DNA from: Macrostomum lignano
Lineage: Eukaryota
Reading direction: 5' to 3'
Length of the DNA: 64,000 nt
Assembly (NCBI GenBank): GCA_002269645.1
Contig: NIVC01000473.1
Span: 1 to 64,000 of the forward strand
Shown here: piece after piece, positions 1-29,653 of the stretch
Layout: every line of letters begins with the position of its first letter
Numbering within the stretch: the first letter of the stretch is position 1
The notes under the pieces: generated by a model
The model's database searches: none
What the model was told of the DNA's origin: nothing
Seen by the model: the letters and a program-made list of their open reading frames with translations, nothing else
Position numbers and translations under genes: made by a program

Positions 1-121
1 AGTCGGAATGGATTGTGGCTTCCTACGCGATTGAGAGGCTGATGGTGGCTCTGGGAGTTTTCGCCACAGCTGCAATCATCGAGTGTTTGTTTTGAAACCC
101 ATGATTCAAAATCAAGACTAA
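1..121 (+). CDS. 3' end (M4 helix) of nAChR-like Cys-loop receptor subunit (cluster gene 1), truncated by window edge
   Basis: Frame from base 3 reads SEWIVASYAIERLMVALGVFATAAII, matching the M4 of the paralogues (DWVVAAHAVERLMVAMGVAATAAII). An apparent 1-bp deletion near 81 shifts the tail; the restored frame gives GVFVLKPMIQNQD* with the stop at 119-121. Confidence 0.8.
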
Positions 122-3308: not shown

Positions 3309-4581
3309 ATGCTATTCTCATTCATACTGCTGGTTTCGCTTTTAGCCTCGACACTAGCTACTGATTTCGATGTCCTGCTAATGCAGCACCTAAACAACAA
3401 AATTGCAAACTACAGCCAATGATTCTGCCAATATTAAACAAGACAAAGAAAGTCAACGTGTCGTTTCACATCATGGTCAGCCCATTTGTCTCAGTGGACA
3501 CTGCCAAGCAGAACATCAAAATCGCTGCCTACGTTTAAGCCAGCTGGGAGGAGGAGCGACTCGTGTGGAATCCTGCCGACTTTGGTGGCGTCGGTTCTAC
3601 TAGCTGGGACCCAGCGAAAATTTGGTACCCAATCATCATGACATACAACGGTAACGGCGATGAACAGATTCTGATTCCTCGGATTCCTACTTACACTGGC
3701 TTCTAAAAATTCAAGCGTGACGACGGTTGCTTCATCCTGGCGCCGGGAGTTCGAATTTTTTTGCCAATTCAACATGTCCGACTTTCCGTACGACCAGCAC
3801 ACTTGCGAGCTGCTGTTCTTCCTTGCAACTCAGGCCAATCCTGATGCAATGCGGCCTGTTCGCAGCGCAATGCCCATGCGGGTGACAGGAATTTACAAGC
3901 CTAGCAACGAGTGGATATTGAAAATTGCAACAGCAGATTTGGAAACCAAAAAATATTTTATAATCGAAGGACATAACGAGACCGAACCTTCGAACTTTGT
4001 TCTGCGATTGCACTTGTAGCGAGTGTCAACGTACTATTTCATCAACATCATCACGCCTTTGCTGCTGTTGACTTTGCTCCAGGTGTTGGTGTACTTTGTA
4101 CCCCTGGAGTCCGGTGAGAAGCTGGGATTCGGCATCACAATCATGCTCAGCTACACTGTGTTCTTGCTGCTCCTGGACGGAATCCTGCCGAAGTCGCAGA
4201 AGATGCCCGCCATTGCCCTGTTCATCACGGCCGCCATGGTGCTGTCCACCGTGTCGCTGCTGCTGACATCGCTGACCATGCTGTTCCACTACAGGCCGGA
4301 GGGCAGCCGCATGCCGGAATGCGCTCGGGCGGCCTTTGTTCGATGCCTGGGCCGCCTGCTCTGCGTCAGCGGCGCCACAGGTGGGCCAGCAGAGTCCGGC
4401 TGAAGCTGAGGGCGATGGCAACTGCGTGCGGAAACCGCCTACGGCGGAAGAGAAATCGGTCGATTCAGACTGGGTGGTGGCCACCCGCGCTATCGAGAGA
4501 TTCTTGTCGCTGTTAGGAGTGGTTGCTACCGCCATCATAATTGTAGTCTTTCTGATGGGGCCGTATCTTCAGTTCTCTTAA
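3309..4581 (+). pseudogene. nAChR-like Cys-loop receptor subunit pseudogene (cluster gene 2)
   Basis: ATG at 3309 with a signal-peptide-like start (MLFSFILLVSLLASTLA). Cys-loop CQFNMSDFPYDQHTC, M1-M3 with ESGEKLGFGITIML, and M4. In-frame stops at 3536-3538 (taa) and 4017-4019 (tag), frameshifts near 3418, 3695 and 4390. No introns. Confidence 0.9.
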
Positions 4582-7435: not shown

Positions 7436-8688
7436 ATGTTTTCTCAAGTAATCCTAATCGGTTCTCTCTTCACGTATTCAGCAGCAACCGATTTCGATGT
7501 CCTGCTGATGCAACATCTTAAGCAAACCATAAAAAACTACAGTCCTTTCATACTGCCGCGAATTAATAAGACCAAAACTATTAAAGTAGCTACGGACATC
7601 ATGGTCAGCCATCTGGTCTCAGTGGACACCGCCAAGCAGAACTTGAGGATATCTGCCTACTTTCAAGCCAGCTGGGAGGAGGAGCGACTCGTGTGGAATC
7701 CTGCCGACTTTGGTGCACCCAGCTCACTCGCTGGGACCCAGCGCATATCTGGTATCCGACAATCATGATATACAATGGCAACGGCGAGGACCAAGTTCTC
7801 GTGCCTCAGATCCCTGTTGCATTGTTATCGTTAAGGCCAACGCTGACCATAGTCACAGCATACTGGCGCCGGGAGTTCGAGTTTTATTGCGAGTTTAGCA
7901 TGGTTGACTTTCCATACGATCATCATGTTTGCGAGCTGTTATTTATTTACCATAATCAAGGCTATCTCGATTCAATCATTCCTGTTCCGAGCACGGCCCC
8001 TCTGCGTGTGCAGGGAATCTACAATCCGAGCAACGAATGGATTCTGACCAATGCCACCACACACTTTGAAAAGAAACTTTACCACGTATTGGATGCACAC
8101 GAGACTGCATTCCCAGCGTTCGTACTGAGATTGCAATTAAAGCGAGTGTCAACGTACTATTTCATCAACATCATCACGCCTTTGCTGCTGTTGACTTTGC
8201 TTCAGGTGTTGGTGTACTTTGTACCCCTGGAGTCCGGTGAGAAGCTGGGATTCGGCATCACAATCATGCTCAGCTACACCGTGTTCTTGCTGCTTCTGGA
8301 CGGAATCCTGCCGAAGTCGCACAAGATGCCCGCCATCGCCCTGTTCATCACGGCCGCCATGGTGCTGTCCACCGTGTCGCTGCTGCTGACATCGCTGGTC
8401 ATGCTGTTCCACTTCAGGCCGGAGGGCAGCCGCATGCCGGGATGCGCTCGGGCGGTCTTTGTTCGATGCCTGGGCCGACTGCTCCGCGTCAGTACTGCAA
8501 CGTCGCCACGGGTCGGCCAGAAACCGTTGGAGGGTTTCGGCATAGCCGATAGAAGTGCCTTGGAGGTTGCCGGAGAAGCCAGGGAATTCGATTCAGACTG
8601 GGTGGTAGCGGCACGCGCAATCGAAAGGCTCATCTTGCTGTTCGGAGTGGTTGCTACTGCTGCCATCATCGGCTTGTTTTTACTATAG
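7436..8688 (+). CDS. nAChR-like Cys-loop receptor subunit (cluster gene 3), intronless, one 1-bp frameshift
   Basis: ORFs 7436-7768 and 7693-8688 join by a single 1-nt shift near 7712-7726. Signal peptide, Cys-loop CEFSMVDFPYDHHVC and M1-M4 present. Could be a sequencing error or a young pseudogene. Confidence 0.85.
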
Positions 8689-11568: not shown

Positions 11569-12846
11569 ATGCTCGCTAGAACAGCGATCCTTTTATGTCT
11601 TCTAAAAGCTGTTACGCCAACGACTGTCGACTTTGACGCCAAGCTGCTAAAATATCTAAAAAACAATACCGATCACAGTCCGTTGCATTTTCCAAGAATC
11701 GACAAAACCAAGATGCTAAACATATCGCTGAACTTCTTGCTGAGCCACATTGTCTCCGTGGACACAGCTAAGCAAAGCATGAAGGTGTCAGCATACGTTG
11801 AAGCCAGTTGGGAGGAAGAGCGACTCGTTTGGAACCCGGAAGACTTCGGCAATACCGTGTACACCCGATGGGAAGCTGAACAGATTTGGCACCCGATCAT
11901 CATTGTCTACAATGGCAACGGCGATGATCAGACATTGGTGCCGAAAGTGTTTGTCGGATTGCAGTCGAAAACGCCTAATTTGTCCGAGGTGAAGGCCACT
12001 TGGCGACGCGAGATCGAAGTATTTTGCGCATACAACATGGCCGAGTTTCCGTTTGATCGACACACTTGCGATATAAAAATATTTGCCACTGATGCATACT
12101 ATGAACTCTTGATGCAACCAGCGGTTTCACCTAACAAGTATAACCTTCTGGGTATTTACCAGGATAGTAAAGAATGGAATCTTGATGCTGCTACAGTCAG
12201 AATATTGGCCCAAAAATATGACATTTATCAAGAGTTTGAAGCCGTTCAACTATCCACTTACAACATCGAAATAAAAATTAAAAGGATATCAACCTATTAT
12301 GTAATCAACATTATAATTCCTCTGTTGCTGCTCGCCCTGCTCCAAGTGCTGGTGTACTTTGTGCCCCTGGAGTCCGGTGAGAAGCTGGGATTCGGCATCA
12401 CAATCATGCTCAGCTACACCGTGTTCCTGCTACTCCTGGACGGAATCCTGCCGAAGTCGCACAAGATGCCCGCCATTGCCCTGTTCATCACGGCCGCCAT
12501 GATGCTGTCCACCGTGTCGCTGCTGCTGACATCGCTGGTCATGCTGTTCCACTACAGGCCGGAGGGCAGCCGCATGCCGGAATGCGCTCGGACGGTCTTT
12601 GTTCGATACCTGGGCCGCCTGCTCTGCGTCAGCGGCGCCACTAGGGCATCACAGAAGACCAATCAAATTGCTGTCGAAGGCTATACAGAGAACAAAAATG
12701 CCCGGAGGCCAAGTGAAAAAGAAGCGTCAGAATCGGACTGGGAAGTAGCAGGTCGAGCAATCGAGAGGCTCATGTCGCTAATGGGCGTTGTTGCTACTGC
12801 CGCCATTATTGGGGCATTCCTGCTGAGGCCACTGTTAGCTAACTAA
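11569..12846 (+). CDS. nAChR-like Cys-loop ligand-gated cation channel subunit (cluster gene 4), intact, single exon, 425 aa
   Basis: Uninterrupted ORF. Signal peptide MLARTAILLCLLKAV, WEEERLVWNP, WHPIIIVYN, Cys-loop CAYNMAEFPFDRHTC (C-x13-C), M1-M3 with GEK, short M3-M4 loop, M4. No loop-C CC. Confidence 0.95.
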   Translation: MLARTAILLCLLKAVTPTTVDFDAKLLKYLKNNTDHSPLHFPRIDKTKMLNISLNFLLSHIVSVDTAKQSMKVSAYVEASWEEERLVWNPEDFGNTVYTRWEAEQIWHPIIIVYNGNGDDQTLVPKVFVGLQSKTPNLSEVKATWRREIEVFCAYNMAEFPFDRHTCDIKIFATDAYYELLMQPAVSPNKYNLLGIYQDSKEWNLDAATVRILAQKYDIYQEFEAVQLSTYNIEIKIKRISTYYVINIIIPLLLLALLQVLVYFVPLESGEKLGFGITIMLSYTVFLLLLDGILPKSHKMPAIALFITAAMMLSTVSLLLTSLVMLFHYRPEGSRMPECARTVFVRYLGRLLCVSGATRASQKTNQIAVEGYTENKNARRPSEKEASESDWEVAGRAIERLMSLMGVVATAAIIGAFLLRPLLAN

Positions 12847-13085: not shown

Positions 13086-13819
13086 ATAATTTTTCCGGCT
13101 TGGGCGCTGTCAACTAAAATAAATATTTATTTACGGCGTCCCCATTATGCTTATTATAGGACGGAATACACACACGCTGCTATCTGCTTACGTATAATAT
13201 ACTCAATATATTATCTACGCTACTAATATGTAGTAGTTTAGCTATTTTTTGTACAATTTGATGTTGGAAAATGTTGGAAGATGTTGGTCTTTTTACATAC
13301 CCGTTGGAATTCCCGTTAAAAGGTTGGGAGTATATTTTCGATATCGCATTTGCATTGTAAAGCGAAATATTATATTAAAAGTGATACCAACTTAACGCTC
13401 TAGAATGGAGCCCGAAGTAAGGCTCCGGATAAAATATATACATAGACGGACAAGTCGGAGATATTCTCTAAGAGAGTTCCAGAAACGAACTTGCAGTGAT
13501 AGGATTTTTCGTTATTTATTTCAGCCAGTCGGTTTGTCAGTTTTTTCGGGAATCTACTTCGAGCTTACTTACTTCTATGTACTTACAGTGCTTAATTTGA
13601 CAGCCCCTTTCGAACATTTTGAAGAGTTTCTCTTTACTACTACCATGCAGTAGTTGATAATGTATATTTTACCAGCTTTCTCGTTTACTAACACACGGAG
13701 GATTCGTGCGCTCAGGGGGTAAGGGATATTTAGTCAAACACGGAAGCAACGTCACGAGTTATATTGCACACAAGAGTACCTCCACAAATGAAATTAATTC
13801 AATTACAGCAGTCCCACTC

Positions 13820-13833
13820 GTTGCCATGGCGAT
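13820..13833. promoter_or_regulatory. X-box (RFX/DAF-19-type) motif GTTGCCATGGCGAT upstream of gene 5
   Basis: Matches RTHNYY-WT-RRNRAC at all but the last base, about 146 bp upstream of the ATG. Conserved in the paralogous promoter of gene 6. Confidence 0.55.
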
Positions 13834-13978
13834 TGATTCAGCACTGGTAGACCAGACGCGTTATTGGCTAAACAGCTATCCTATAGGGTCTTTTCTTCAA
13901 CTCTGCTTTCTATGATGATATAGAGTAGAAAGCAGTAACCAACATTTGCCTCTTACACCGTATCGACACATCGACACA

Positions 13979-15268
13979 ATGTCCGTACGCGAAATTCTAC
14001 TAGTCGCCACAGCGATTATAGCTGCCACTTGTGGCGGCTCAGCTCAGCATAGAGACCTGGAGCAGGAGCTGCTGCAGTACTTGAAGAACAATATCACCAA
14101 CTATAGTCCGCTGCTGCGACCCACAATTAACGCCTACAAGCCTACTTACATCACTATGGACACATCCTTGACCCAGCTGGTATCGGTAGACAGTGCCAAG
14201 CAAAGCGTCAAGATTGGGGCTTTCGTAATGGCCGGCTGGACTGAGGAGCGTCTGGTCTGGGATCCGGCCAAGTTTGGGAACCTAACCGTGATTAACTGGG
14301 ACAATTCGAATGTCTGGTTTCCTGTCATCCTCATCTATAATGGCATCGGAGACAACCAGATGCTCACTCCACAGATGCCAGTGTATTTAATGTCGATCCG
14401 ACCCAACCTCACCAAAGTCGTCGCCGGGTGGCGTCGAGAGTTCGAATTCTCGTGTGAGTTCGACGTGAGCAAATTCCCCATAGACAAGCACGTCTGCGAG
14501 CTCGAGTTCTTCTTTAGCGACCAGGGCCATGACAACCAAATGCTGATTCCTTTCAAGAACAATATGAAGCCATTCCAAATAGATGGACTTTATCGAACTA
14601 ACAGCGAATGGAAGTTGGTGAATGCGTCGACGTCGTCCGAACGGAAGCCGTACAAACTCGTTCAAGGTGCACCGGATGTGCTTCTACCAACTTATGTAAT
14701 CCGTCTGGAGATCGAGAGAGTCTCTGCTTACTACTTTATGAACATCATCACACCACTGCTACTGCTGACTTTGCTACAAGTGTTGGTATACTTTGTGCCC
14801 CTGGAGTCTGGCGAGAAGCTGGGATTCGGCATCACAATCATGCTCAGCTACACTGTGTTCCTCCTTCTGCTGGACAGCATCGTGCCCAAGTCGCAGACAA
14901 CACCAGCGATCGCTTCGTTCATCACAGCCGCTATGATCTTGTCGACGATATCTCTGCTACTAACGTCGCTAATTATGCGTCTGCACTTTGCTCCGGAGGG
15001 CAATCGGATGCCGGCCTGCATGCGTGCCGTTTTGATTGGCTTCTTGGCTCGAGTGTTCTGCGTTGGCGGCGCTGCCAAAATCAACAAGGTCGAGATCAAG
15101 AATGGGACTAGCATCGAAAAAAAGAACACTACTGATGAAGAGGACACTCCGGTTGTTCGATCCGATTGGGTGGTTGCTGCGCACGCTGTCGAACGACTCA
15201 TGGTTGCTATGGGAGTGGCCGCCACCGCTGCTATTATTGGAGTTTTCGTCATCCAACCGTACACTTAA
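13979..15268 (+). CDS. nAChR-like Cys-loop receptor subunit (cluster gene 5), intact, single exon, 429 aa
   Basis: Uninterrupted ORF. Signal peptide, Cys-loop CEFDVSKFPIDKHVC, ESGEKLGFGITIMLSYTVF, M4. Confidence 0.95.
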   Translation: MSVREILLVATAIIAATCGGSAQHRDLEQELLQYLKNNITNYSPLLRPTINAYKPTYITMDTSLTQLVSVDSAKQSVKIGAFVMAGWTEERLVWDPAKFGNLTVINWDNSNVWFPVILIYNGIGDNQMLTPQMPVYLMSIRPNLTKVVAGWRREFEFSCEFDVSKFPIDKHVCELEFFFSDQGHDNQMLIPFKNNMKPFQIDGLYRTNSEWKLVNASTSSERKPYKLVQGAPDVLLPTYVIRLEIERVSAYYFMNIITPLLLLTLLQVLVYFVPLESGEKLGFGITIMLSYTVFLLLLDSIVPKSQTTPAIASFITAAMILSTISLLLTSLIMRLHFAPEGNRMPACMRAVLIGFLARVFCVGGAAKINKVEIKNGTSIEKKNTTDEEDTPVVRSDWVVAAHAVERLMVAMGVAATAAIIGVFVIQPYT

Positions 15269-15662
15269 AGACCGCAAGAGATTATACTGAGTCGGCTTAT
15301 GAAACTTTCTGAAAAAAGATTCTTTAATAATAATAAATTCTCTATGCTTCTATCTTCTAATTAAATGAATTAATTCACATCAAAAGTGCATGGGTGCTTC
15401 TAGTCTTTTCATTTAATCGAGCGAATTTCAGCATTATTCTGTTCTACGAGCTATGCTAATTGTATGCCACTCTGTGCCACTAGAGACAACTAAAATCAGA
15501 TTATGCAAACATATAAAAAACAGCTCTGGTTCTCTACTCACAGCAATTGCTGCCGCAGTAGGCTTGCACCCCAATCCTTCATAAAACGATAGGTTCATCA
15601 AGAGGATAGCTACTCAATCATGCAGTAAACTAAGAGGCACTTTTCATGATTGCAAATGGTGA

Positions 15663-18950: not shown

Positions 18951-19535
18951 AGATGTTTCAGTCTGAATGTACTAGCTGACTGCTCTTAAAGGGTGCGTCA
19001 ATGGACAGCAATCGAAACGCTGCTTCAACTTTGTTAGCCGAAGTGGACCGATTAATTAATTACCAATGTTTGATCTTAGTATAAGCTATCTGTTTTACTA
19101 AGTAACGAATAGATATTTGTCAGCAAGTAAGACGGTTTCAGTAACTATTCCATTTTCTTTAGATGAGTAAAATGTACACTACTTTTTCTAATATAGTGGT
19201 CTGATTGAGTGAACAGCCTTGGAACTATTGTGAAAGAGAAATAATTTTGATGCCTGCACTTTCGGTCTTTAAAGGACATGTGATCACAGCGGGACCGCAG
19301 ACAAGAAGATGGAAATCCTAAAGCAAACCTTTTGTGAGGTTGCGTTTGATTTGTGCAGTTGGGGTGGTGGCTGCTCTATTATTATTTGCATCTCGCTTTA
19401 CTCTGTGCATGCCGCCACCCCAGTTGGGTGACTCATTTTATAACCCTTCTATCGCTGACTATATAATCGCTCCCCATTTATTGTGCATGTCAAATATACT
19501 TCGTGATTTTGACTCTAATTTCTCGGCTCTTACAT

Positions 19536-19546
19536 TGGTGGCAGCG
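19536..19546 (+). promoter_or_regulatory. Primer-binding site TGGTGGCAGCG (tRNA-Leu-type)
   Basis: One nt after the LTR-terminal ...ttaca; complementary to a tRNA 3' end ...CGCUGCCACCA. Confidence 0.7.
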
Positions 19547-19568
19547 AGAACCCAGTGCAAGTGCACTT

Positions 19569-20350
19569 ATGGCCCAGAACACCCTGCTACCGCCAAAGTT
19601 CAGTGGAACAGACTGCTCTGACGTGAGAAAATGCCTACGCATCTTCGAGGAGTTTGCCAACGATGCGAAATGGGACGATGAGACCTCAGCATCGAAAGTG
19701 AAACTGCTGCTTACGGGAGAAGCCCAACTGGTCGTCTGGGACCTCGCCGAGACGAGGCAGAAGAGCTTCAAGAGCATCAAAGAGGACCTCACAAAGTTTT
19801 ACGGAGGTGAATCCGACAGCTTTAAGGCTATGAGTGATTTCTACTCGAGGAAGCGTGGAGACACCGAGACGCTCCGTGAGCTCTGCTTCAACCTGAAGCT
19901 GCTGTACCAGAAGGCCAGGCCGAGTGACTCAGTTGCTCAGTGGGACCGAGATGTGCGTTTCAAACTTCTGCAGCTGCTCAAGGCCGACATTCGCGACAAC
20001 CTGCTCAAGACAGAGGACGCAGAGAGCTGCTGCCTGGAGACTCTGCTGCGGCGTGCGGCTCGGCTGGAGAAGCTGGCTTGGCGACAGGACCGCCTGGACC
20101 GACTGGAGAAACGCATGAAGGAGCTCATCGCGAGGGTCAGCGTGCAGTCCGGTATCGACACTCGGCGTCGCCGTCAGCAGCGAGGAGGCGGCTGCTTCAA
20201 CTGCGGCCAGCTCGGACACCGTGCAGCGCAATGTCAGCAGCGTCAGAAACAGCCGGACCAGATCATCTGCCACAAGTGCTCGGGGCGAAGGCACAAGGCC
20301 TCCGTCTGGCCATCCAAGGCTCCGGGAAACTTCAAAGGGTTGGTGCAACG
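19569..20350 (+). CDS. Retrotransposon Gag with zinc knuckles
   Basis: MAQNTLLPPKFSG..., CFNCGQLGHRAAQC (CCHC) and a degenerate second knuckle CHKCSGRRHKASVW. Confidence 0.85.
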
Positions 20351-23300
20351 GGTGCGGGACTCACACCAACCCGAAGGAGCAATCCCGTGCTTCATGCGAT
20401 TTTTGTTCCTGGAGAGGCAAACAGCAAGCCGTGCCGCTGGCTGCTGGACACCGGAGCGCAGACCTCACTGATCAGCGACGTTGCCTTGAGAGCTGGACGG
20501 TCGCGGCGAGCTGAAGCCGGCAGGCGTCAGGCCTGTGTCCGTGGACGGCTCCGCCCTCGAGCTGCTGGGAAGTGTGAGCATTACCGTGCGACTCGGTCAT
20601 CAGCTGCGCAGACAAATGGACGTGCTGGTGGTCAGAGTTATTCGCTTAGACTTCATCATCGGGATGGATTTCGTGAGAAAGGCGGCCAGATCGCAGTTCA
20701 GCATCGACCGGGGTGCCAAGACAGTCGCATTCGATGGTGAGGCGGTTCCGTTCAGTAACTGCGATTCCAAGCAAGATGACCCGCTGTCCTGGTGCTTGGT
20801 ACCCACAGTGATCATCGCCAGAGTTCAGGGCGCCGTCGTGGTGCCGCCAAGGTCAGTTAAAGTCGTGGACGTGACGACAGAGACCAAGCAGGCACAGGGC
20901 ATCTTCGAGCCGTCACAGGAGTTCATCGACAGAATCGGAGTGCTGCCCGGCCGCGTGTTCGCGGTGTCTTCAGCGAGCGGCAAGATCCCGGTTCAGGTGT
21001 GCAACCTTAGCTGCAGCCCGGTCACGCCGTTCTCCAACCAGAGCATCGGCACTTTCGAGAGCGCGGAGGTAATCGATGAGGACGAGGACGTGCACGAGTG
21101 GCGAGGCCCCGCGGACCAGTTCAACATTAATCCGGAGCTGCCAGAGGAGGACAGAGACCGACTGGCGAGGCTGCTGAGGGCATTTTCCAATGTGGTCTCA
21201 GTCCATGAATTTTTAGTATATGGAATTTGACGTTTGGACGAGCAGCGCAGCGCAGCACAAGATTGAGCTTGACGACGGCGCACGCCCGATTCGCCAACGG
21301 CCTCGGCGGGTGCCTCACGCCTTTAGGAGGCAGGTGGACGAGAAGCTGGGGCAGATGCGATAACATGGCGTCATCGAGCCTTCCACCAGCCCGTGGGCGA
21401 GCAACCTGATAATCGTCAGGAAGAAGAATAATGACATCCGAGTCTGTGTCGACTGACGGGCGCTAAACAACCTTACGGTGAAGGACGCCCACCCGCTGCC
21501 GCATTTGCACCAGGTGCTCGACTCTTTGGCTGGCTGCTCATAGTTCTCTACGATTGATATGCGCCAAGGCTTCCTTCAGGTGGAGGTCAGAAAGGAGGAT
21601 CGGCCGTTGACAGCGTTCTACACTCCGAGCGGCCTGATGCAATTCTGCAAAATGGGATTCGGCATGTGCAACGCGCCTGCAACGTACCAGCGAATGATGG
21701 AGCTCATCATGACTGGTCTGAGCTGGGAGGAGGTCGTCGCGCACATTGATGACCTGATCATCTTCAACAGGGACTTTGAGAGCCACGTTCAGTCGCTGTC
21801 CAAGGTGTTGCATCGACTGCGGTCTGCCAAGCTGAAGCTGAACCCCGGCAAGAGCTTCTTCCCCAACCGGAGCGTCACGTACCTGGGCCACCAAGTCTCT
21901 GAGAGCGGCATCGCACCTGCCGCGGAGAAGGTTGAGGCGATCAGGCGGATGCCAGAGCCACAGTCCGAGAAGGATGTCCGGCGCATCATCGGCATGCTCA
22001 GCTTCTACCGCAGGTTCGTGCCCAACTTCTCTGACATTGCCAAGCCGCTGCATCACTTGGCGCAAAAAAGCGGGCTGCGACTTCGTGTGGATGCCAGAGC
22101 ATGCTGCGGCGCTGATCAAGTTGAAGGACGCGCTGACCAAGGCCGCGGTGCTCCAGCTGCCCGACTTCAGCCGGTCTATCGTCATCAGCTGTGACAGCAG
22201 CGCTGTGGCCTTGGGTGCGGTGCTCAGCCAGGAGCTGCCAGTGGCCTACGCATCCCGGACGCTGAGCAAGGCAGAGCGCAACTACAGTACAACGGACCGG
22301 GAGCTGCTCGCGATTGTATGGAGCCTCAAGCAGTTCCGCATGTACCTGAGCAACAGCCGCAAGATCCAAGTGTTCACCGACCACAAGCCAATCACCGGGC
22401 TGCTCAACGCGAAGGAGCCAATCGGTCGGCTCGCACGTTGGCTGCAACTCATTCAGGAGTTCCCCCTGGAGATCCTGTACCGGCAAGGCAAGGAGAACAT
22501 CGTGCCAGACGCCCTCAGCCGAGCACGCGGTTCTACACGCGGTTCGGCACGCGATGCTCCAGCCCGACTTTCAAGTTCCGGCGGCGGCGAGTGAGTCGGT
22601 CCAAAAGCTCACCGGACGGCGCACTGCTCCGCAACGGGCTGCCAGTGATCCCACAGCACATGCGAGCGGAGCTGCTGCAACAGGCGCCGACCGGCCGAGC
22701 GCGGGTTACCTCGGACAGCGGCGGGTGCTGCGAGCCTTGCGCGAGCGTTCCTCGTGGCCGGACATGCGCGAGGACGTGCAGGACTGGGTGCGGAGCTGCC
22801 TGGTCTGCCAACGCCGCAAAGGAGCGCCAAAGCGAGCGCGCGCTGAGCTGGTGCGGCAACCGCTACCGGCCAAGCCACGGGGTGTCATGCAGATCGACAT
22901 CAAGGGCCCGCTGCCAGCCACCGATTCAGGCAAGCGCTACATCCTCTGCTTTGTTGACACATTTTTTAAATTGGGTGGAGGCTGCCGCCCTCAGCCAGAT
23001 CGACGCCAAGACGGTAGCCGAGGCTCTGGTGACTTGCGTGGTGCTGCGGCACGGAGTTCTGGAGGTCGTGCACTCGGACTCGGATCGAGGCCGAAGTTTT
23101 CAAGCAGACCTGCGCGCTGCTCGGAGCAGAAAAATCGAGGACCTCACCGTTTCACCCCAGCGGCAACGGGAACGTCGAGAGGTTCAATAGAGGTCCAGCA
23201 AATTTCGTTGGACGCTGGGCAACATGCTCTCGGCATTCTGCTCGGAGAACCAAGCCGGCTGGGATGCCCTGCTGCCCTACGTCGTGTGGGCCTACAACAG

Positions 23301-23913
23301 CTCTGAGCATAGCTCCACGGGCAAGTCGCCGTTCAAAGTTCTACGCGGCATGGAGCCCAGACTGCCAGTCGACTTGGCGCCCGGTGGGCAGCGCGACCAG
23401 CCGCAGGACTGCGCGGACCTGCAGGCGAGAATCAGGCGCGGCTTCCAGGTGGTGCGAGCGCACCTGCACACGGCCCAGAGATCGCAGCACGAGTTCTACA
23501 ATCTAGGGGCAGAGACTACCGACTTCAACACCGGTGACCGAGTGATGCTTGACGCACCATGCGATGAAGCGCGGCCAGTGCAAGACGCTGTCGAACCGGT
23601 GGTCCGTCCCGTTCATCGTCCTTAAGAAGGTTCAGTGAACTACCGGCTGCGGGCTGTGAACGGCAGGCCCTGGTTGCTGGTCCACCACGACCGCTTGAAG
23701 CACTTTATCGACCGACCGAATCTGAGCGACAGGCCGCCAGCCAAGCCGGCCACCGAGGACGACTGTCCGAGCGTCGAGGGCTCCGCGGGCCAGCTGGTCG
23801 GCCCGGACGCCTGGGAGCAGCTGCGCGACCCGAATGCGGCTGAACCCGGCAACGCGCTACGTCGGTCGGGCAGGCAGCGACGGCGGCCGGATTTTTACAC
23901 GGCGACCAGTTGA
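20350..23913 (+). pseudogene. Gypsy pol (protease, RT, RNase H, integrase), frameshifted
   Basis: Protease LLDTGAQTS. RT GFGMCNAPATYQR, AHIDDLII (Y of YxDD replaced by H) and YLGH. RNase H CDSSAVALGAVLSQ and ERNYSTTDRELLA, TDHKP. Integrase QIDIKGP, FVDTF and WDALLPYVVWAYN. In-frame stops at ~21455 and 21541. Confidence 0.9.
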
Positions 23914-24417
23914 CGAGCTTTCTGTCTGCTACTTGATTGGGACTTTTTCGTGTTGCATGAACCCTTTTTGTTGTTTTACTTTTGTTTTATTCCGTTTCTT
24001 ATCAAGCTCGCAGATCCTAAGCTGATTTGCGATCCCCTGGTCGAATGGTGGCTGCCTCGCAACTCCGAGGTAGACTAATCAGAGAGTTCCCCGGAAACTG
24101 CGAAGCAGCCACCGTTCACCGAACCGGAGATTGCAAAGAACTTGTAGTCTCCAGAAGAAACCCCTAAGGCCAGCCAGGAGACCGTACAGTCACTTTACAT
24201 CATCTTGACGAGTTACAAATTCTTACTAACAGTAGTTAGATAGATCATGCGTGTTTTACAAGCTTTATTTTACAAGTATTTTATTAACGCGAGGACTAGT
24301 GCACCCCGGGGGAAATGGTATAGTTAGCCAAACACGGAAGCAATATTGGCATTTGTGACGAGCGTATACTTCCTAACTTCTACAAACGAGATTCATCCAA
24401 TTACAGCAGTTCCACTC

Positions 24418-24431
24418 GTTGCCATAGCGAC
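24418..24431. promoter_or_regulatory. X-box motif GTTGCCATAGCGAC upstream of gene 6
   Basis: Full match to RTHNYY-WT-RRNRAC, about 152 bp upstream of the ATG. Confidence 0.6.
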
Positions 24432-24582
24432 GGCTTCAACAATGGTAGGTGAGACGCATTCTGTTTAACAGATTTGCTTATGGTGCTTTGCTTCAGCTCT
24501 GCTTTCTATTTAATTCTGCCGTAAAGTAGAAAGCCGTAACTAACACAGTAACCAAAATTTGCTTCTTACACATATCGACACA

Positions 24583-25890
24583 ATGTCCGTACGCGGAATT
24601 CTACTAGCTGCCACAGCAATTTTAGTTGCAACTTGTGGCGGCTCAGCTCAAGATAGAGATCTGCAACACGAGCTGCTGCAGTACTTGAAGAACAATATCA
24701 CCAACTATAGTCCGCTGCTGCGACCCACAATTAACGCCTACAAGCCTACGTACATCACTATGGATACATCCTTGACACAGCTGGTATCGGTAGACAGTGC
24801 CAAGCAAAGCGTCAAGATTGGCGCCGTTTTAATGGCCGGCTGGACTGAGGAGCGTCTGGTCTGGGATCCGGCCAAGTTTGGGAACCTAACCGTGATTAAC
24901 TGGGACAATTTGAATGTCTGGTTTCCTGTCATCCTCATCTATAATGGCATCGGAGACAACCAGATGCTCACTCCGCAGATGCCAGTGTATTTGATGTCGA
25001 TCCGACCCAACCTCACCAAAGTCGTCGCCGGGTGGCGTCGAGAGTTCGAATTCTCGTGTGAGTTCGACGTGAGCAAATTCCCCATAGACAGGCACGTCTG
25101 CGAGCTCGAGTTCTTCTTTAGCGACCAGGGCCATAACAACCAAATGCTGATTCCTTTCAAGAACAATATGAAGCCATTCCAAATAGACGGACTTTATCGA
25201 ACTAACAGCGAATGGAAGTTGTTGAATGCGTCGACGTCGTCCGAACGGAAGCCGTACAAACTCGTTCAAGGTGCACCGGATGTGCTTCTACCAACTTATG
25301 TGATCCGCCTGGAGATCGAGAGAGTCTCCGCCTACTACTTTATGAACATCATCACACCACTGCTACTGCTGACTCTGCTACAAGTGCTGGTATACTTTGT
25401 GCCCCTGGAGTCTGGCGAGAAGCTGGGATTCGGCATCACAATCATGCTCAGCTACACTGTGTTCCTTCTTCTGCTGGACAGCATCGTGCCCAAGTCGCAG
25501 ACAACACCAGCGATCGCTTCGTTCATCACGGCCGCTATGACCTTGTCGACGATATCTCTGCTACTAACGTCGCTAATTATGCGTCTGCACTTCGCTCCGG
25601 AGGGCAATCGGATGTCGGCCTGCATGCGTGCCGTTTTGATTGGCTTCTTGGCTCGAGTGTTCTGCGTTGGCGGCGCTGCCAAAATCCATAAGGTCGACGG
25701 AGCAGAGGACGTCGAGATCAAGAATGAGACTAGCATCGACAAAAAGAATGCTACTGACGAAGAGGACACTCCGGTTGTTCGATCCGATTGGGTGGTTGCT
25801 GCGCACGCTGTCGAACGACTCATGGTTGCTATGGGAGTGGCCGCGACCGCTGCTATTATTGGAGTTTTCGTTATCCAACCGTACACTTAA
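24583..25890 (+). CDS. nAChR-like Cys-loop receptor subunit (cluster gene 6), intact, single exon, 435 aa; recent duplicate of gene 5
   Basis: Uninterrupted ORF nearly identical to gene 5. The flanks 24185-24580 and 25890-26420 are homologous to 13600-13978 and 15270-15850. Confidence 0.95.
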   Translation: MSVRGILLAATAILVATCGGSAQDRDLQHELLQYLKNNITNYSPLLRPTINAYKPTYITMDTSLTQLVSVDSAKQSVKIGAVLMAGWTEERLVWDPAKFGNLTVINWDNLNVWFPVILIYNGIGDNQMLTPQMPVYLMSIRPNLTKVVAGWRREFEFSCEFDVSKFPIDRHVCELEFFFSDQGHNNQMLIPFKNNMKPFQIDGLYRTNSEWKLLNASTSSERKPYKLVQGAPDVLLPTYVIRLEIERVSAYYFMNIITPLLLLTLLQVLVYFVPLESGEKLGFGITIMLSYTVFLLLLDSIVPKSQTTPAIASFITAAMTLSTISLLLTSLIMRLHFAPEGNRMSACMRAVLIGFLARVFCVGGAAKIHKVDGAEDVEIKNETSIDKKNATDEEDTPVVRSDWVVAAHAVERLMVAMGVAATAAIIGVFVIQPYT

Positions 25891-26247
25891 TGACAGCTCG
25901 AGATTAGCCTGATGGGGCTTATGAAACTTACTGAAAATTGATTCTTAAATATTTATCAACCCTCTATCATTTTCTCTTTTAACTAAATCCGATAAAGTGT
26001 TTTGCATCATAAAGTGCACGGGTGCCTCTAGTTGTCTCTAGTGGCAATTACGAGCTTAGAACAAGAACAATGCAAAATGTCGGCTAAACTAATTATCAAG
26101 CTGAATAAGTGCGAGCATCTATAAAGAATGGCTCTTGCTCTCTTGTTGCACTGCCAATTCCTAACGAAATGAGTTTCAGAGGAAATTACCGGATTCGTCC
26201 CTCAATCATTCAATCAACTAAGCTTCAGTTTGCACCATTGCAAATGA

Positions 26248-27013: not shown

Positions 27014-29653
27014 TCACAGATTCGGGGTTGCTACGCCGACAGCTTTCAAAGAATCCTCCAGCGCTGCCAGAACCCGTTCGGCCACGGCCTCCGTGGCGTT
27101 GAGGCCCATCAGGCCGATGCGCCACACCTGGCCTGCGGTGGGGCCGAGACCGCCAGCGATCTCTACGGAGTGTCTGGCGGTTGGCAGGTGCGGGATAATC
27201 GTAGTGATTTATTACTTTAATAATGAGACACCCAGAGTGATAGAGGCTCAGGTCATCAAAATATATCAATCAAATATAGCAACTGAGGATCTGGGAGGCT
27301 GGCCCAGCAACTGAGGATCTGGGAGGCTGGCCCAGCAACTGAGGATCTGTGAGGTAGGCCCAGCAACTGACACTCTGGGAGGCTTGCCCAGCAACTGAGG
27401 ATCTGGGAGGCTGGCCCAGCAACTGAGGATCTGGGAGGCTGGCCTAGCAACTGAGAATCTGGGAGGCTGGTGCAGCAACTGGGGATCTGAGAGCCTGGCC
27501 TAGCAACTGGGGATCTGGGAGGCTGGCAACAACAACTGGGGATGTAAAAAGGCGGCGCTACTATACACAAACTAAAGAAAGCGCTCACTTGGCCATCGCG
27601 TGCTGAACAACAGCCTTCCAATCAACGCCCTCCGGCACAGCTATTGTGGTAACGGTTGGCGCCCGGTCCTGCGGTTTCGACACGAACAGCCGCTGCCCGA
27701 GGCGACCTTGGAGTCCGGCGCGTAGCTTGTCAGCGGCGCGCTCGTGTCGCTCCCACGCGGCTGGCAGGCCTTCGACGGCCACTAAGCGTAGCGCTTCGCG
27801 GGCGGCGTACACCAGACTGATCGGCGCCGTGTGGTGGTAGCGCCTGGCCGACACGGGCTGGTCAGGCGGCTCGGTGGTGCGGCAGCCCCAGTAGTTTGCC
27901 AGCTGGCTCGCGTCCAGGTAGAACGAAGGCGGCGGCACCTTGCGGCTGAGGATCTGCGGTTGAAGCCATTTAAGTTATACGGATGGTTGCTTAACTGATA
28001 ACAAGTCTCAGAGTCTTAATCACATCGTTGTGTCCCAACGCCTTCCTAATGTCTTAGTGTCCTAATGCTTGAGAGTCCTAATGCCTTTGTGTCCCAGTGC
28101 CTGAGTGTCCTAATGTCTGAGTTTCCTAGTCTTAGTGTCCTAATGTCTTTGTGTCCCAATGCCTTACGAGTAGTATCCCAATGCCTGAGTGTCCTAATGT
28201 CTGAGTTTCCTAGTCTTAGTGTCCTAATGTCTGAGTTTCCTAGTCTTAGTGTCCTAATGTCTGAGTTTCCTAGTCTTAGTGTCCTAATGTCTGAGTTTCC
28301 TAGTCTTAGTGTCCTAATGTCTGTGTGTCCCAATGCCTTAGTATCCCAATGCCTGAGTCCTAATCCTAATGAGTCCTAATGCCTGAGTCCTAATGTCTGA
28401 GTTTCCTAGTCTTAGTGTCCTAATGTATTTGTGTCCCAATGCCTGAGTGTCCTAATGTCTTAACTGCCTTTAATCATGTCTTAGTGTCCCAATGCCATAG
28501 CATATCTTAGTGTCTTAGCGCCTTAGGTTGCCATTATCTTAACGTATTAACTTATTAGTGACTTAATGTTCTAATGTTCTAGTGACTACTTAGTTACTAC
28601 TTACTGCTTACCGTTAGGGCCAAAAAACCACAAATCGCCTCAAAGTCAATATCGAAAACCCAAATCAAAGTAACTTGCACTGTCATTAGTGTCTTATGCT
28701 GTTCTGTTTTAGCACTTTACTTTATATTAACGTATGGCTCCGTAATGCTATATTGTGTAAATAGCATAGTGTGCGAATCGAATAGAGTTTCAATTCCGTC
28801 ATGTCGTAATGTCCAAATGTATCGATGCTTTAGTGCTCTCTTGTCATATAGTATCAATTTCACAACTATATTGATTGGGCTAATATCCAATAGTGTCTTA
28901 TGGCATCATGGCTTAGTTATAGTGTCTACTGAGAATAGTCAATATTCCTGTTGCTTAATGTCTAAGTGTCTGAATTCCTAACCTTCCTCCTAGCAGCCTC
29001 CGAGAAGGAGATTAGCCCCAGGCCGGGCGTGCAGCCCAAGCACTTCTGACTGCCGGTGTACACGCAGTCGATCAGCCAATCGTCAGTGAGCAGCGGAGCT
29101 CCTCCGGCAGCGGCAACGGAGTCTACAAGCAGCAGGGCGCCATGCTTGCGGCAGACGCCGCCCAGGTGTTCGAGCGGCTGCAGCGTGCCGGTGCTGCTTT
29201 CGCCGTGAACAACGAAGACAACGCTGGGCCTGTGCTGCTGAAGGGCCGACTCCAGCTGCTCGGGGGTGAACACGCTGCCAGGAGGCTGCGACAGCAGGAC
29301 AGGTTTCAGCGACAGGCGGCGGGACAGTTCAGCGAACCTGTCGCCCCAGATGCCGTTGCGACAGACTAAGACGGTTTCACCTGGCTCCAGGAGGTTCATG
29401 CAGGCCGCCTCCATGGCGCAGTGGCCTGGGTAGAAACCGGGTGTCTGTCTGTCTGTCTGTCTGCCCTGTGTGTCCGTCTGTCTGTGTGTCTGTCTGTCTG
29501 CCCTGTGTGTCCGTCTGTCTGTGTGTCTGTCTGTGTGTCTGTCTGTCTGCCCTGTGTGTCCGTCTGTCTGTCTGTGTGTCTGTCTGTCTGCCCTGTGTGG
29601 CCGTCTGTGCCTGTCTGTTTGTCTGTTTTTGTCTGTCTGTCTGTCTGCCTGTG

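What the first reader, a model, noticed from the sequence alone, without database searches (positions are those of the whole stretch)
11569..12300. Canonical acetylcholine-binding residues are systematically missing
Aligned by eye to alpha7 (mature numbering). Loop B W149 (CKLKFGSW) is T in gene 4 (CDIKIFAT), H in gene 3, S in genes 5/6 and A in gene 2. Loop C has no vicinal CC and is longer (KYDIYQEFEAVQLSTY; PYKLVQGAPDVLLPTY). Loop D W55 is Y, F or V. The Asp of the WxPD motif is replaced (WHPI, WYPT, WFPV). Only the Y93- and Y188-equivalents are retained. The cation-pi box is therefore broken in every member, and the loops differ between members, which suggests different, possibly hydrophobic, ligands.
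Basis: partly seen in the sequence, partly recalled or inferred. Interest (0 to 1): 0.72.

Follow-up and report, generated by a model that had tools for sequence, protein, structure and literature searches.

The report
Flatworm orphan nicotinic-like receptor array
The window holds a tandem array of intronless nicotinic-receptor-like channel genes from a Macrostomum-type flatworm that keep a normal cation pore but have lost most residues that bind acetylcholine. This pattern is already well documented in molluscs, annelids and octopus "taste-by-touch" receptors, so it is a new example, not a new kind of thing.

Summary
Window 11569-12300 encodes the signal peptide and extracellular domain of an intact, intronless 425-codon Cys-loop receptor gene (g4, 11569-12846). 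It is one of six tandem paralogues: g1 is cut by the window start, g2 is a pseudogene, g3 has one frameshift, and g4, g5 and g6 are intact.

Three independent alignments never place an aromatic residue opposite loop-B W149 (they give A173, T174 or D175). The loop-C Cys-Cys pair is absent and loop C is 4 residues longer. The Asp of WxPD is I/T/V. Loop-D W55 is Y/F/V. Only the Y93 and Y188/190 equivalents survive.

The pore (GEK, 9' Leu), the Cys-loop (C-x13-C, FPFD) and the four TM segments are canonical nAChR-type. The best sequence and fold matches are alpha4beta2, alpha3beta4, muscle and alpha7 nAChRs.

The only close relatives among billions of proteins are three or four Macrostomum lignano entries, and they share the same losses. 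The loss was therefore inherited once, not repeated.

Similar degenerate nAChR-like genes are common in lophotrochozoans: 21 of 98 nearest cluster representatives keep two or fewer of the six canonical features.

Most likely these are non-cholinergic orphan cation-channel subunits with diversified pockets. The "hydrophobic ligand" idea is untested. This is a new member of a known kind, of moderate-to-low interest.

The parts
3..95 (+). g1: C-terminal (M4) fragment of a further paralogue, cut by the window start
   Evidence: tblastn shows 100% identity over 26 aa to M. lignano P0006 and 96% to P0002. The translation ends ...ATAAIIECLF* and departs from P0002 after AAII.
3309..4581 (+). g2: pseudogene copy (loop B CELLFFLA)
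   Evidence: In-frame stops lie inside AAYV*ASW (3524-3547) and RLHL*RVSTYY (stop at 4017-4019). There are at least three frame changes, near 3420, 3688-3711 and 4403. It is 85-92% identical at protein level to M. lignano P0011.
7436..8688 (+). g3: otherwise intact copy with a single frameshift at about 7715-7716 (WYPT, CELLFIYH)
   Evidence: Two ORFs, 7436-7768 and 7693-8688, overlap in different frames. The homology switches frame after NPADFG.
11569..12846 (+). g4: intact intronless 425-aa Cys-loop receptor gene (the finding)
   Evidence: It is a single ORF, colinear with P0001 residues 1-415 in one tblastn HSP. Pfam finds LBD plus TM domains. PDB best hits are nAChR alpha3/alpha4/alpha7, E 3e-39 to 2e-35. 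Foldseek TM-scores to nAChRs are 0.65-0.72.
11782..11811 (+). g4 loop D (KVSAYVEASW); Y76 at 11794-11796 replaces W55
11887..11922 (+). g4 loop A (WHPIIIVYNGNG); I110 replaces the WxPD Asp; Y114 is the Y93 equivalent and is kept
11992..12021 (+). g4 loop-E strand carrying the family-invariant W145-R146-R147-E148 motif
   Evidence: The motif is invariant in all 7 family sequences. It replaces the canonical W-x-P-P-A-I-F/Y-K.
12025..12069 (+). g4 Cys-loop, C153-x13-C167, with FPFD
12079..12102 (+). g4 loop B (IFATDAYY); A173, T174 or D175 occupies the W149 position
   Evidence: MAFFT gives T174, HMMER gives D175 and hhalign gives A173.
12211..12261 (+). g4 loop C (QKYDIYQEFEAVQLSTY); Y217 is the Y188/190 equivalent; no Cys-Cys; 4 residues longer; L228 or Q227 at Y195/198
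   Evidence: In the AF2 model the beta9 strand ends at 217 and beta10 starts at 226.
12295..12555 (+). g4 M1-M3 pore module; M2 carries GEK (-1' Glu), 9' Leu and 19' Asp; near-identical DNA in g2 and g3 (gene-conversion tract)
   Evidence: It is 90-92% nucleotide-identical to g2 and g3 over about 357 bp, while the LBD is not alignable at DNA level. Sliding windows reach 94-98%. dS is 0.31 here against saturated dS in the LBD.
12733..12825 (+). g4 M4
13979..15268 (+). g5: intact intronless paralogue, 429 aa (WFPV, CELEFFFS, loop D Phe)
24583..25890 (+). g6: intact intronless paralogue, 435 aa; a recent duplicate of g5 (loop D Val)
   Evidence: A 1.66-kb duplication is 90.4% identical. dS is 0.09 and dN/dS is 0.16 in the LBD and 0.06 in M1-M3.

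Best explanation
These are subunits of pentameric ligand-gated cation channels. They belong to a small, lineage-specific (Macrostomum flatworm) clade that descends from nicotinic acetylcholine receptors.

Origin (inferred). The clade most likely arose by retroposition, because all copies are intronless. It then grew by tandem duplication with birth-and-death turnover.

Anatomy (shown).
- The channel half is kept almost unchanged: M1-M3, the GEK selectivity motif, 9' Leu, the Cys-loop FPFD motif and the pre-M1 Arg. Between g2, g3 and g4 it is even homogenised by gene conversion.
- The orthosteric pocket has lost the loop-B Trp, the loop-C Cys-Cys and second Tyr, the WxPD Asp and the loop-D Trp.
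- Loops B, F and C have diverged almost to randomness between paralogues.
- The intact copies are under purifying selection.

Function (inferred). The channels are no longer gated by acetylcholine through a cation-pi box. They respond to other, still unknown ligands that differ between paralogues, either as homomers or as heteromers of array members.
For: Fold and family.
- Pfam finds LBD plus TM domains.
- nAChR alpha/beta chains are the best PDB sequence hits, at 1e-39 to 1e-31, against 1e-26 for 5-HT3A.
- Foldseek's top 50 are all nAChRs, with TM-scores 0.65-0.72.

Pore. The M2 sequence is GEKLGFGITIMLSYTVFLLLLD. GE- is the motif in 90 of 98 background nAChR-like sequences, and PMC9874803 describes it as the cation-selectivity motif.

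Loss of canonical residues. Three independent alignments agree. The family keeps 2 of 6 canonical features.

The genes are alive.
- g4, g5 and g6 are intact ORFs of 425-435 codons.
- Between g5 and g6, dN/dS is 0.16 in the LBD and 0.06 in M1-M3, at dS 0.09.
- Family-specific invariant motifs are shared with M. lignano proteins.

Modular evolution.
- Protein identity is 20-33% in loops B to F and C, against 82-95% in M1-M3.
- The pore module is 90-98% identical at nucleotide level between g2, g3 and g4.

Clade restriction.
- An exhaustive phmmer search of 1.84 billion cluster representatives found only P0001, P0006 and P0011 above about 30% identity.
- A search of 5.8 billion proteins with the LBD profile found only P0001, P0002 and P0011.
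- The named cluster members are from M. lignano.

Precedent.
- Intronless tandem nAChR-like expansions with degenerate binding sites occur in molluscs (PMC6896357).
- Alpo4 is an orphan nAChR-like receptor from an annelid (PMC10338036).
- Cephalopod chemotactile receptors derive from nAChRs and do not bind ACh (PMC11526382; bioRxiv 10.1101/2025.03.03.641191).
Against: - There are no functional or expression data of any kind.
- Of the six copies, one is dead (g2), one is frameshifted (g3) and one is cut by the window start and departs from its closest homologue in its last residues (g1). Part of the array is therefore decaying.
- Three aromatic box positions keep an aromatic in g4 (Y76, Y114, Y217). 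Extra aromatics sit in the loop-C tip (Y220, F223) and after loop B (Y177, Y178), so a partly rebuilt cage cannot be excluded.
- The AF2 model is a monomer of modest confidence (pLDDT 61, pTM 0.50). No coordinates were available, so pocket geometry was not examined.
- dS is saturated for every pair except g5/g6. Selection on g4 itself is inferred only from its intact ORF.
Confidence: 0.55

Rival explanations
1. They are accessory (structural, non-ligand-binding) subunits of ordinary heteromeric acetylcholine receptors, comparable to vertebrate beta3, alpha5 or beta1. They co-assemble with canonical alpha subunits encoded elsewhere, so they need no ACh site of their own.
For: They lack the loop-C Cys-Cys pair and are therefore non-alpha by definition. 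The pore and gating elements are fully nAChR-like. The beta3 and beta2/beta4 extracellular domains are among the good PDB hits.
Against: Both faces of the subunit are degenerate, whereas 39 of 52 non-alpha background sequences keep the loop-B Trp and 33 of 52 keep the WxPD Asp. The binding loops are the fastest-diverging part of the protein, yet the LBD is still under purifying selection in g5/g6. That is not expected for a surface with no function. A lineage-specific tandem array with rapid turnover is more typical of receptor diversification than of a fixed structural subunit.
Confidence: 0.2
2. They are still gated by acetylcholine or choline through a non-canonical binding mode. The remaining Tyr residues (Y76, Y114, Y217) plus loop-C aromatics would replace the loop-B Trp, in the way that some invertebrate ACh-gated channels reportedly move the key aromatic to another loop.
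For: Y93 and Y188/190 equivalents are invariant in the family. Loop D is aromatic in g3, g4 and g5. g4 has Y220 and F223 in the loop-C tip.
Against: The extra aromatics are not conserved: the g5/g6 loop-C tip is KLVQGAPD, and loop D is Val in g6 and Ile in P0002. No Trp is available in loops B or C of any member. The WxPD Asp, which in nAChRs is held to position loop B (established knowledge, not tested here), is also gone.
Confidence: 0.12
3. The array is a decaying set of retrogene copies with no function. The missing residues simply reflect relaxed constraint.
For: g2 has stops and frameshifts and g3 has a frameshift. g1 departs from its closest homologue P0002 in its last residues, after AAII. 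The M. lignano counterpart of g2 (P0011) is itself a truncated model with an out-of-frame tail. Jiao et al. report more unexpressed genes among intron-poor nAChR genes (PMC6896357).
Against: Three ORFs of 425-435 codons are intact. dN/dS between g5 and g6 is 0.06-0.16. M1-M3 is 82-95% identical at protein level across paralogues that are about 50% identical overall. Invariant family motifs are shared with M. lignano proteins.
Confidence: 0.08

Closest known systems
Expanded intronless, tandemly arrayed nAChR-like genes of lophotrochozoans (Jiao et al. 2019, PMC6896357)
   Same: Both are intronless and lie in head-to-tail tandem arrays that include pseudogenised copies. Both are lineage-specific expansions with a highly divergent ligand-binding domain in which the principal ACh site is often not conserved (only 13 of 33 C. 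gigas alpha subunits keep it). The host is a lophotrochozoan (Platyhelminthes).
   Different: That work described molluscs, with some annelids. This clade is a flatworm (Macrostomum) one whose nearest non-flatworm relatives are only about 25-31% identical. The array here is small (six copies). Gene conversion of the pore module was seen here; I did not find it among the passages of that paper retrieved.
Cephalopod chemotactile receptors (CRT1 and relatives; van Giesen 2020, Allard/Kang 2023, as summarised in PMC11526382 and bioRxiv 10.1101/2025.03.03.641191)
   Same: Both are nAChR-derived, intronless cation channels that have lost the ACh-binding signature, and both vary most in the binding pocket.
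   Different: There is no evidence of common origin. No CR appears among the top 60 sequence matches or top 50 fold matches in the PDB, and the taxon is a flatworm. CR function (hydrophobic or microbial ligands, sucker sensory cells) has been demonstrated; nothing is known here. The pocket positions here include conserved charged residues (a loop-B Asp and the WRRE motif) and are not an obviously greasy pocket.
Alpo4, orphan nAChR-like receptor of Alvinella pompejana (PDB 8BX5; PMC10338036)
   Same: Both are lophotrochozoan nAChR-like subunits without the loop-C vicinal disulfide and with no known ligand. Alpo4 is recovered as a PDB homologue (1.1e-28; 1.5e-14).
   Different: Alpo4 keeps the whole aromatic cage (F103, W159, Y199, Y205, W65). 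The window family lacks the loop-B Trp, the second loop-C Tyr and the loop-D Trp.
Canonical neuronal nAChR subunits (alpha7, alpha3, alpha4, beta2)
   Same: They are the best sequence and fold matches. They share the C-x13-C Cys-loop with FPFD, four TM segments, the GEK motif and 9' Leu in M2, and the Y93 and Y188/190 equivalents.
   Different: Identity is 20-27%. There is no loop-B Trp, no Cys-Cys, no Y195/198, no WxPD Asp and no loop-D Trp. Loop C is 4 residues longer. The M3-M4 loop is short (about 60 aa). The CDS has no introns.
Flatworm acetylcholine-gated chloride channels (schistosome ACCs; as described in PMC9874803)
   Same: Both are flatworm members of the nAChR-related branch of Cys-loop receptors.
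   Different: ACCs carry an anion-selectivity motif (PAR or PAK) before M2. This family has GEK, the motif of cation-selective channels.

Membership tests
Cys-loop (pentameric) ligand-gated ion channel superfamily | Extracellular beta-sandwich domain plus a four-helix transmembrane domain | tested here: met
   Pfam PF02931 at 4.1e-27 and PF02932 at 2.5e-23. The AF2 secondary structure shows 10 strands followed by M1-M4 helices. Foldseek TM-scores to nAChR chains are 0.65-0.72.
Cys-loop (pentameric) ligand-gated ion channel superfamily | Cys-loop: two Cys separated by 13 residues, with an F/YPxD motif | tested here: met
   In g4 this is C153-AYNMAEFPFDRHT-C167. Both Cys residues are invariant in all family members.
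Nicotinic acetylcholine receptor branch (cation-selective) | Closest homology to nAChR subunits and not to 5-HT3, GABA, Gly or GluCl receptors | tested here: met
   nAChR alpha3/alpha4/alpha7 score 3e-39 to 2e-35, against 2.7e-26 for 5-HT3A. The LBD profile search also returns nAChR chains first.
Nicotinic acetylcholine receptor branch (cation-selective) | Cation-selectivity signature at the cytoplasmic end of M2 (G-E-K, -1' Glu) and no PAR motif | tested here: met
   SGEKLGFG is present in every member. GE- occurs in 90 of 98 background nAChR-like sequences. Selectivity itself was not measured.
Nicotinic acetylcholine receptor branch (cation-selective) | Aromatic box for ACh: loop A Tyr, loop B Trp, two loop C Tyr, loop D Trp | tested here: not met
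   Only the loop A Tyr (Y114) and the first loop C Tyr (Y217) are kept. Loop B has A/T/D, the second loop C position is L/Q, and loop D is Y/F/V/I.
nAChR alpha-type subunit | Vicinal Cys-Cys at the tip of loop C | tested here: not met
   There is no CC in loop C of any family member.
Cephalopod chemotactile receptors | nAChR-derived, intronless, ACh-binding signature lost | tested here: met
   The CDS is a single exon, colinear with homologues. The canonical residues are lost.
Cephalopod chemotactile receptors | Common descent with cephalopod CRs (specific sequence or fold affinity) | tested here: inconclusive
   No CR chain is among the 60 best PDB sequence hits or the 50 best Foldseek hits. 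All close relatives are from Macrostomum. No CR sequence was available for a direct tree. Independent origin is the likelier reading.
Cephalopod chemotactile receptors | Activation by poorly soluble or hydrophobic ligands; expression in peripheral sensory cells | not testable with these tools
   This needs electrophysiology and in situ or single-cell expression data.
Lophotrochozoan intronless tandem nAChR-like expansion (Jiao et al. 2019) | Intronless or intron-poor genes in tandem arrays in a lophotrochozoan genome, with a divergent LBD | tested here: met
   Six same-strand copies lie within 26 kb, all without introns. The nearest named relatives are from Macrostomum lignano, Platyhelminthes, Lophotrochozoa. 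The family keeps 2 of 6 canonical LBD features.
Flatworm ACh-gated chloride channels (ACCs) | Anion-selectivity motif (PAR or PAK) preceding M2 | tested here: not met
   The motif is GEK in all members.

The most novel reading that the evidence does not exclude
Macrostomum flatworms may have evolved, independently of cephalopods, their own family of nAChR-derived chemoreceptor-like channels with a modular design. In this reading the pore module is kept uniform by gene conversion between neighbours, while loops B, F and C diversify to recognise different non-cholinergic cues. The loop-B Asp present in most members, together with the invariant W-R-R-E motif on the loop-E strand, could form an amine-plus-acid recognition site like that of amino-acid-gated Cys-loop receptors. 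The ligands would then be zwitterionic or charged metabolites and not greasy ones.
Probability: 0.2. Interest if true: 0.6.

Novelty: new member of a known kind. Interest (0 to 1): 0.33.

Why it matters
If these channels are functional, they add a flatworm lineage to the growing list of animals that have repurposed the nicotinic receptor scaffold for other ligands (cephalopod chemotactile receptors, mollusc and annelid orphans, nematode betaine and amine channels). Macrostomum lignano is a tractable laboratory model with RNAi, transgenesis and single-cell atlases, so de-orphanising the family there would be practical. The mosaic pattern, with a pore module homogenised by gene conversion and binding loops diverging, is a tidy natural example of modular receptor evolution. 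It does not change current understanding: degenerate ACh sites in expanded lophotrochozoan nAChR-like genes are already documented.

Tried and rejected
1. Exact-sequence look-ups of g4, P0001 and P0002 in the assembly index found nothing. No orthologous locus or synteny could be examined, and the species could not be fixed beyond 'Macrostomum lignano or a close relative'.

2. The first word-indexed homologue search returned only 3 hits and missed P0006 and P0011. The exhaustive representative search and an LBD-profile search were needed to show that the family really is that narrow.

3. The AF2 model built from a 6-sequence alignment reached only pLDDT 61 and pTM 0.50. The tool returns no coordinates, so it served only for strand boundaries and Foldseek.

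4. I looked for octopus CRT1 among PDB sequence and fold hits in order to align the pockets directly. It was not in the listed top 50-60, so the CR comparison rests on the literature only.

5. Site-wise dN/dS on the loops was not feasible. dS is saturated for all pairs except g5/g6, there are few sequences, and a gene-conversion tract confounds any tree.

6. I considered and rejected an anion-channel (ACC-like) identity, because the M2 motif is GEK. I also rejected the Cys-less flatworm LGIC clade of PMC9874803, because both Cys-loop cysteines are present.

7. Literature searches for Macrostomum or Platyhelminthes nAChR-like orphan clades found no description of this family.
Full report
**What is at the coordinates.**
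Window 11569-12300 is the 5' two-thirds of a single uninterrupted ORF, ATG 11569 to stop 12844-12846, 425 aa. This stretch encodes a signal peptide and the whole extracellular domain up to pre-M1. The rest of the ORF encodes M1-M3, a short (about 60 aa) cytoplasmic loop and M4. Pfam finds Neur_chan_LBD (4.1e-27) and Neur_chan_memb (2.5e-23).

tblastn of this protein against the window shows six same-strand copies:
- g1: an M4 fragment at 3-95, cut by the window start.
- g2 (3309-4581): a pseudogene with two in-frame stops and at least three frame changes.
- g3 (7436-8688): one frameshift at about 7715.
- g4: the finding, intact.
- g5 (13979-15268): intact.
- g6 (24583-25890): intact.

All copies are colinear with full-length homologues in single HSPs, so they are intronless.

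**Organism.**
The window is eukaryotic. It also carries an LTR retroelement, a cullin gene, an HPF1 gene, a class-V aminotransferase gene and many minisatellites.
- The only close relatives of the receptors in 1.84 billion cluster representatives are P0001 (56% identity) and the fragments P0006 and P0011. Everything else is at or below about 30% identity.
- An LBD-profile search of 5.8 billion proteins again found only P0001, P0002 and P0011.
- Where the sources give names, these proteins are from Macrostomum lignano, for example PAA92206.1. That species belongs to Platyhelminthes within Lophotrochozoa.
- P0011 is 85-92% identical to g2. Its C-terminal tail even matches g2 read in another frame. 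The g1 fragment is 100% identical to P0006 over 26 aa.
- Exact look-ups of g4, P0001 and P0002 failed.

I therefore call the source 'Macrostomum lignano or a close relative'. g3, g4, g5 and g6 have no near-identical counterpart among annotated M. lignano proteins, which points to rapid gene turnover or annotation gaps.

**Checking the observation.**
I re-derived the residue mapping in three independent ways: MAFFT L-INS-i of 110 nAChR-like sequences, hhalign of the family profile against 31 sequences with all canonical features, led by an alpha7-like sequence, and HMMER against PDB alpha2/alpha3/alpha4 chains.

| Canonical residue | Loop | In this family |
|---|---|---|
| W55 | D | Y76 in g4; Y in g3, F in g5, V in g6, F in P0001, I in P0002 |
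| WxPD Asp | A | I110 in g4; T or V in paralogues |
| Y93 | A | Y114, kept in all members |
| W149 | B | T174 (MAFFT), D175 (HMMER) or A173 (hhalign); never aromatic in any member under any alignment |
| Y188/190 | C | Y217, invariant in the family; last residue of beta9 in the AF2 model |
| C192-C193 | C | absent |
| Y195/198 | C | L228 or Q227 |

Loop C also carries a 4-residue insertion relative to alpha7-like sequences. The exact residue under W149 depends on the alignment, but the conclusion does not.

**How unusual it is.**
I used the 98 usable background sequences, which are the best single-domain hits.
- The loop-B Trp is kept in all 46 alpha-type and 39 of 52 non-alpha sequences.
- The WxPD Asp is kept in 42 of 46 and 33 of 52.
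- W55 is kept in 37 of 46 and 26 of 52.
- This family keeps 2 of 6 canonical features, and so do 21 of the 98 background sequences.
- The fully degenerate examples I looked up are gastropod (Candidula, Bulinus, Elysia) and annelid (Dimorphilus) proteins.

The pattern is real and non-random but not rare among lophotrochozoan nAChR-like genes. Because the M. lignano homologues share the same losses, 'every member' reflects one ancestral loss. After that loss the positions drifted or diversified: T/H/S/A/N under W149, I/T/V/E under D89, and Y/F/V/I under W55.

**What is conserved.**
- The Cys-loop is canonical (C153-x13-C167, FPFD).
- M2 reads GEKLGFGITIMLSYTVFLLLLD, with -1' Glu and 9' Leu. This is the cation-type motif (PMC9874803).
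- The pre-M1 Arg and the M2-M3 Pro are present.
- PDB sequence hits are led by nAChR alpha3 (2.9e-39), alpha4 and alpha7. Alpo4 scores 1.1e-28 and 5-HT3A scores 2.7e-26.
- The AF2 model has modest confidence (pLDDT 61, pTM 0.50). Its 50 best Foldseek matches are all nAChR chains, with TM-scores 0.65-0.72.
- No octopus chemotactile receptor appears in any of the listed hits.

**Evolutionary pattern.**
- Protein identity between paralogues is 82-95% in M1-M3 and 47-69% in most of the LBD. It drops to 20-33% from loop B through loop F and across beta9-loop C-beta10.
- At DNA level the M1-M3 segment of g4 is 90-92% identical to g2 and g3 over about 357 bp, and 94-98% in sliding windows. The LBDs are not alignable at DNA level.
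- dS is 0.31 in that tract against saturated dS elsewhere. GC3 is 0.80-0.85 there against 0.52-0.57 in the LBD.
- I read this as gene conversion of the pore module between neighbouring genes.
- g5 and g6 lie in a 1.66-kb duplication that is 90% identical, with a retroelement between the copies. Their dS is 0.09 and dN/dS is 0.16 in the LBD and 0.06 in M1-M3, so both copies are under purifying selection.
- Two of their nine mature-LBD differences sit at and next to the W55 position.

**Family-specific features.**
The invariant LBD residues include Y114-N-G-x-G, W145-R146-R147-E148 on the loop-E strand, Y197, W203 and Y217. The WRRE block replaces the canonical W-x-P-P-A-I-F/Y-K. An Asp follows the W149 position in most members: D175 in g4, also D in g5, g6, P0001 and P0002, but N in g3 and T in g2-type. 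I could not determine whether these side chains face the pocket. They do argue against assuming a purely hydrophobic site.

**Most likely mechanism.**
- Shown: the fold, the pore signature, the loss of canonical residues, the intact ORFs, purifying selection on g5/g6, loop hypervariability, and the restriction of the clade to Macrostomum.
- Inferred: the proteins assemble as pentameric cation channels whose orthosteric site no longer recognises ACh by cation-pi binding. They would be gated by other ligands that differ between paralogues.
- Confidence: 0.55.
- Rivals: accessory subunits of ordinary nAChRs (0.20), non-canonical ACh or choline binding (0.12), and a non-functional decaying array (0.08).

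**Comparison with what is known.**
- The annelid orphan Alpo4 lacks the Cys-Cys pair but keeps the aromatic cage (PMC10338036).
- Cephalopod chemotactile receptors are intronless nAChR derivatives gated by hydrophobic or microbial ligands (PMC11526382; bioRxiv 10.1101/2025.03.03.641191).

The present family works like these on paper but shows no specific affinity to any of them. Literature searches found no description of a Macrostomum or flatworm clade of this type.

**Verdict.**
- Observation: confirmed.
- Interpretation: partly supported. The box is broken and the loops differ, but the ligand class is unknown.
- Novelty: new member of a known kind.
- Interest: 0.33.

Noticed in passing
window 12276-12645 versus 4026-4381 and 8135-8492: The M1-M3 (pore) coding segment of g4 is 90-92% identical at DNA level to g2 and g3, and up to 98% in 90-nt windows. 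The ligand-binding halves are not alignable as DNA. GC3 jumps to 0.80-0.85 in this tract against 0.52-0.57 in the LBD. This looks like (GC-biased) gene conversion of the pore module only.
   Followed up: partly
window 3309-4581 (g2): g2 is a pseudogene with stops and frameshifts. The M. lignano protein P0011 is 85-92% identical to it. The last 40 or so residues of P0011 match g2 read in a different frame, so the M. lignano counterpart is itself frameshifted or mis-modelled.
   Followed up: partly
window 7697-7740 (g3): A single one-base frame change falls between NPADFG and TQLTRWDP in an otherwise intact gene. I cannot tell a sequencing error from a young pseudogene.
   Followed up: no
window 11992-12021 and homologous positions in g3, g5 and g6: The motif W-R-R-E-(F/I)-E is invariant in the family on the loop-E strand just before the Cys-loop. 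It replaces the canonical W-x-P-P-A-I-F/Y-K. With the Asp found in loop B of most members, it could indicate a charged recognition site. Side-chain orientation is unknown.
   Followed up: partly
window 13778-15404 versus 24376-26032; 19503-23306: g5 and g6 lie in a 1.66-kb direct duplication that is 90.4% identical. Between them sits a GC-rich (about 60%) LTR-type retroelement with gag zinc-knuckle, RT, RNase H and integrase ORFs in shifted frames.
   Followed up: partly
window 14222-14227 versus 24826-24831 (g5 residues 82-83 and the same residues in g6): The two youngest paralogues differ by adjacent substitutions (F82V, V83L) exactly at the loop-D W55 position. These are 2 of only 9 differences in the mature extracellular domain.
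   Followed up: no
window 3-95 (g1): The M4 of g1 departs from its M. lignano homologue P0002 after ...ATAAII and stops four codons later (ECLF*). The copy is either disrupted at its 3' end or has a variant C-terminus.
   Followed up: no
window 40796-48495: A 7.7-kb satellite has a 30-bp unit (259 copies, 90% matches) and extreme GC skew (+0.6). It produces long spurious ORFs on both strands.
   Followed up: no
window 37950-40162 and 52345-52822: The same 42-bp minisatellite family (TTGGCTAGATTAGCAATCCATTC...) occurs twice in opposite orientation. One copy lies inside the cullin gene region. Other minisatellites (16, 20, 22, 23, 33 and 131 bp units and a (TGTC)n tract) fill 28-52 kb.
   Followed up: no
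window 28962-29414 (-), 32389-32853 (-), 49666-53447 (-): The neighbouring genes have large exons. They are a class-V aminotransferase (AGXT-like), histone PARylation factor 1 (HPF1) and a cullin in at least three exons.
   Followed up: partly
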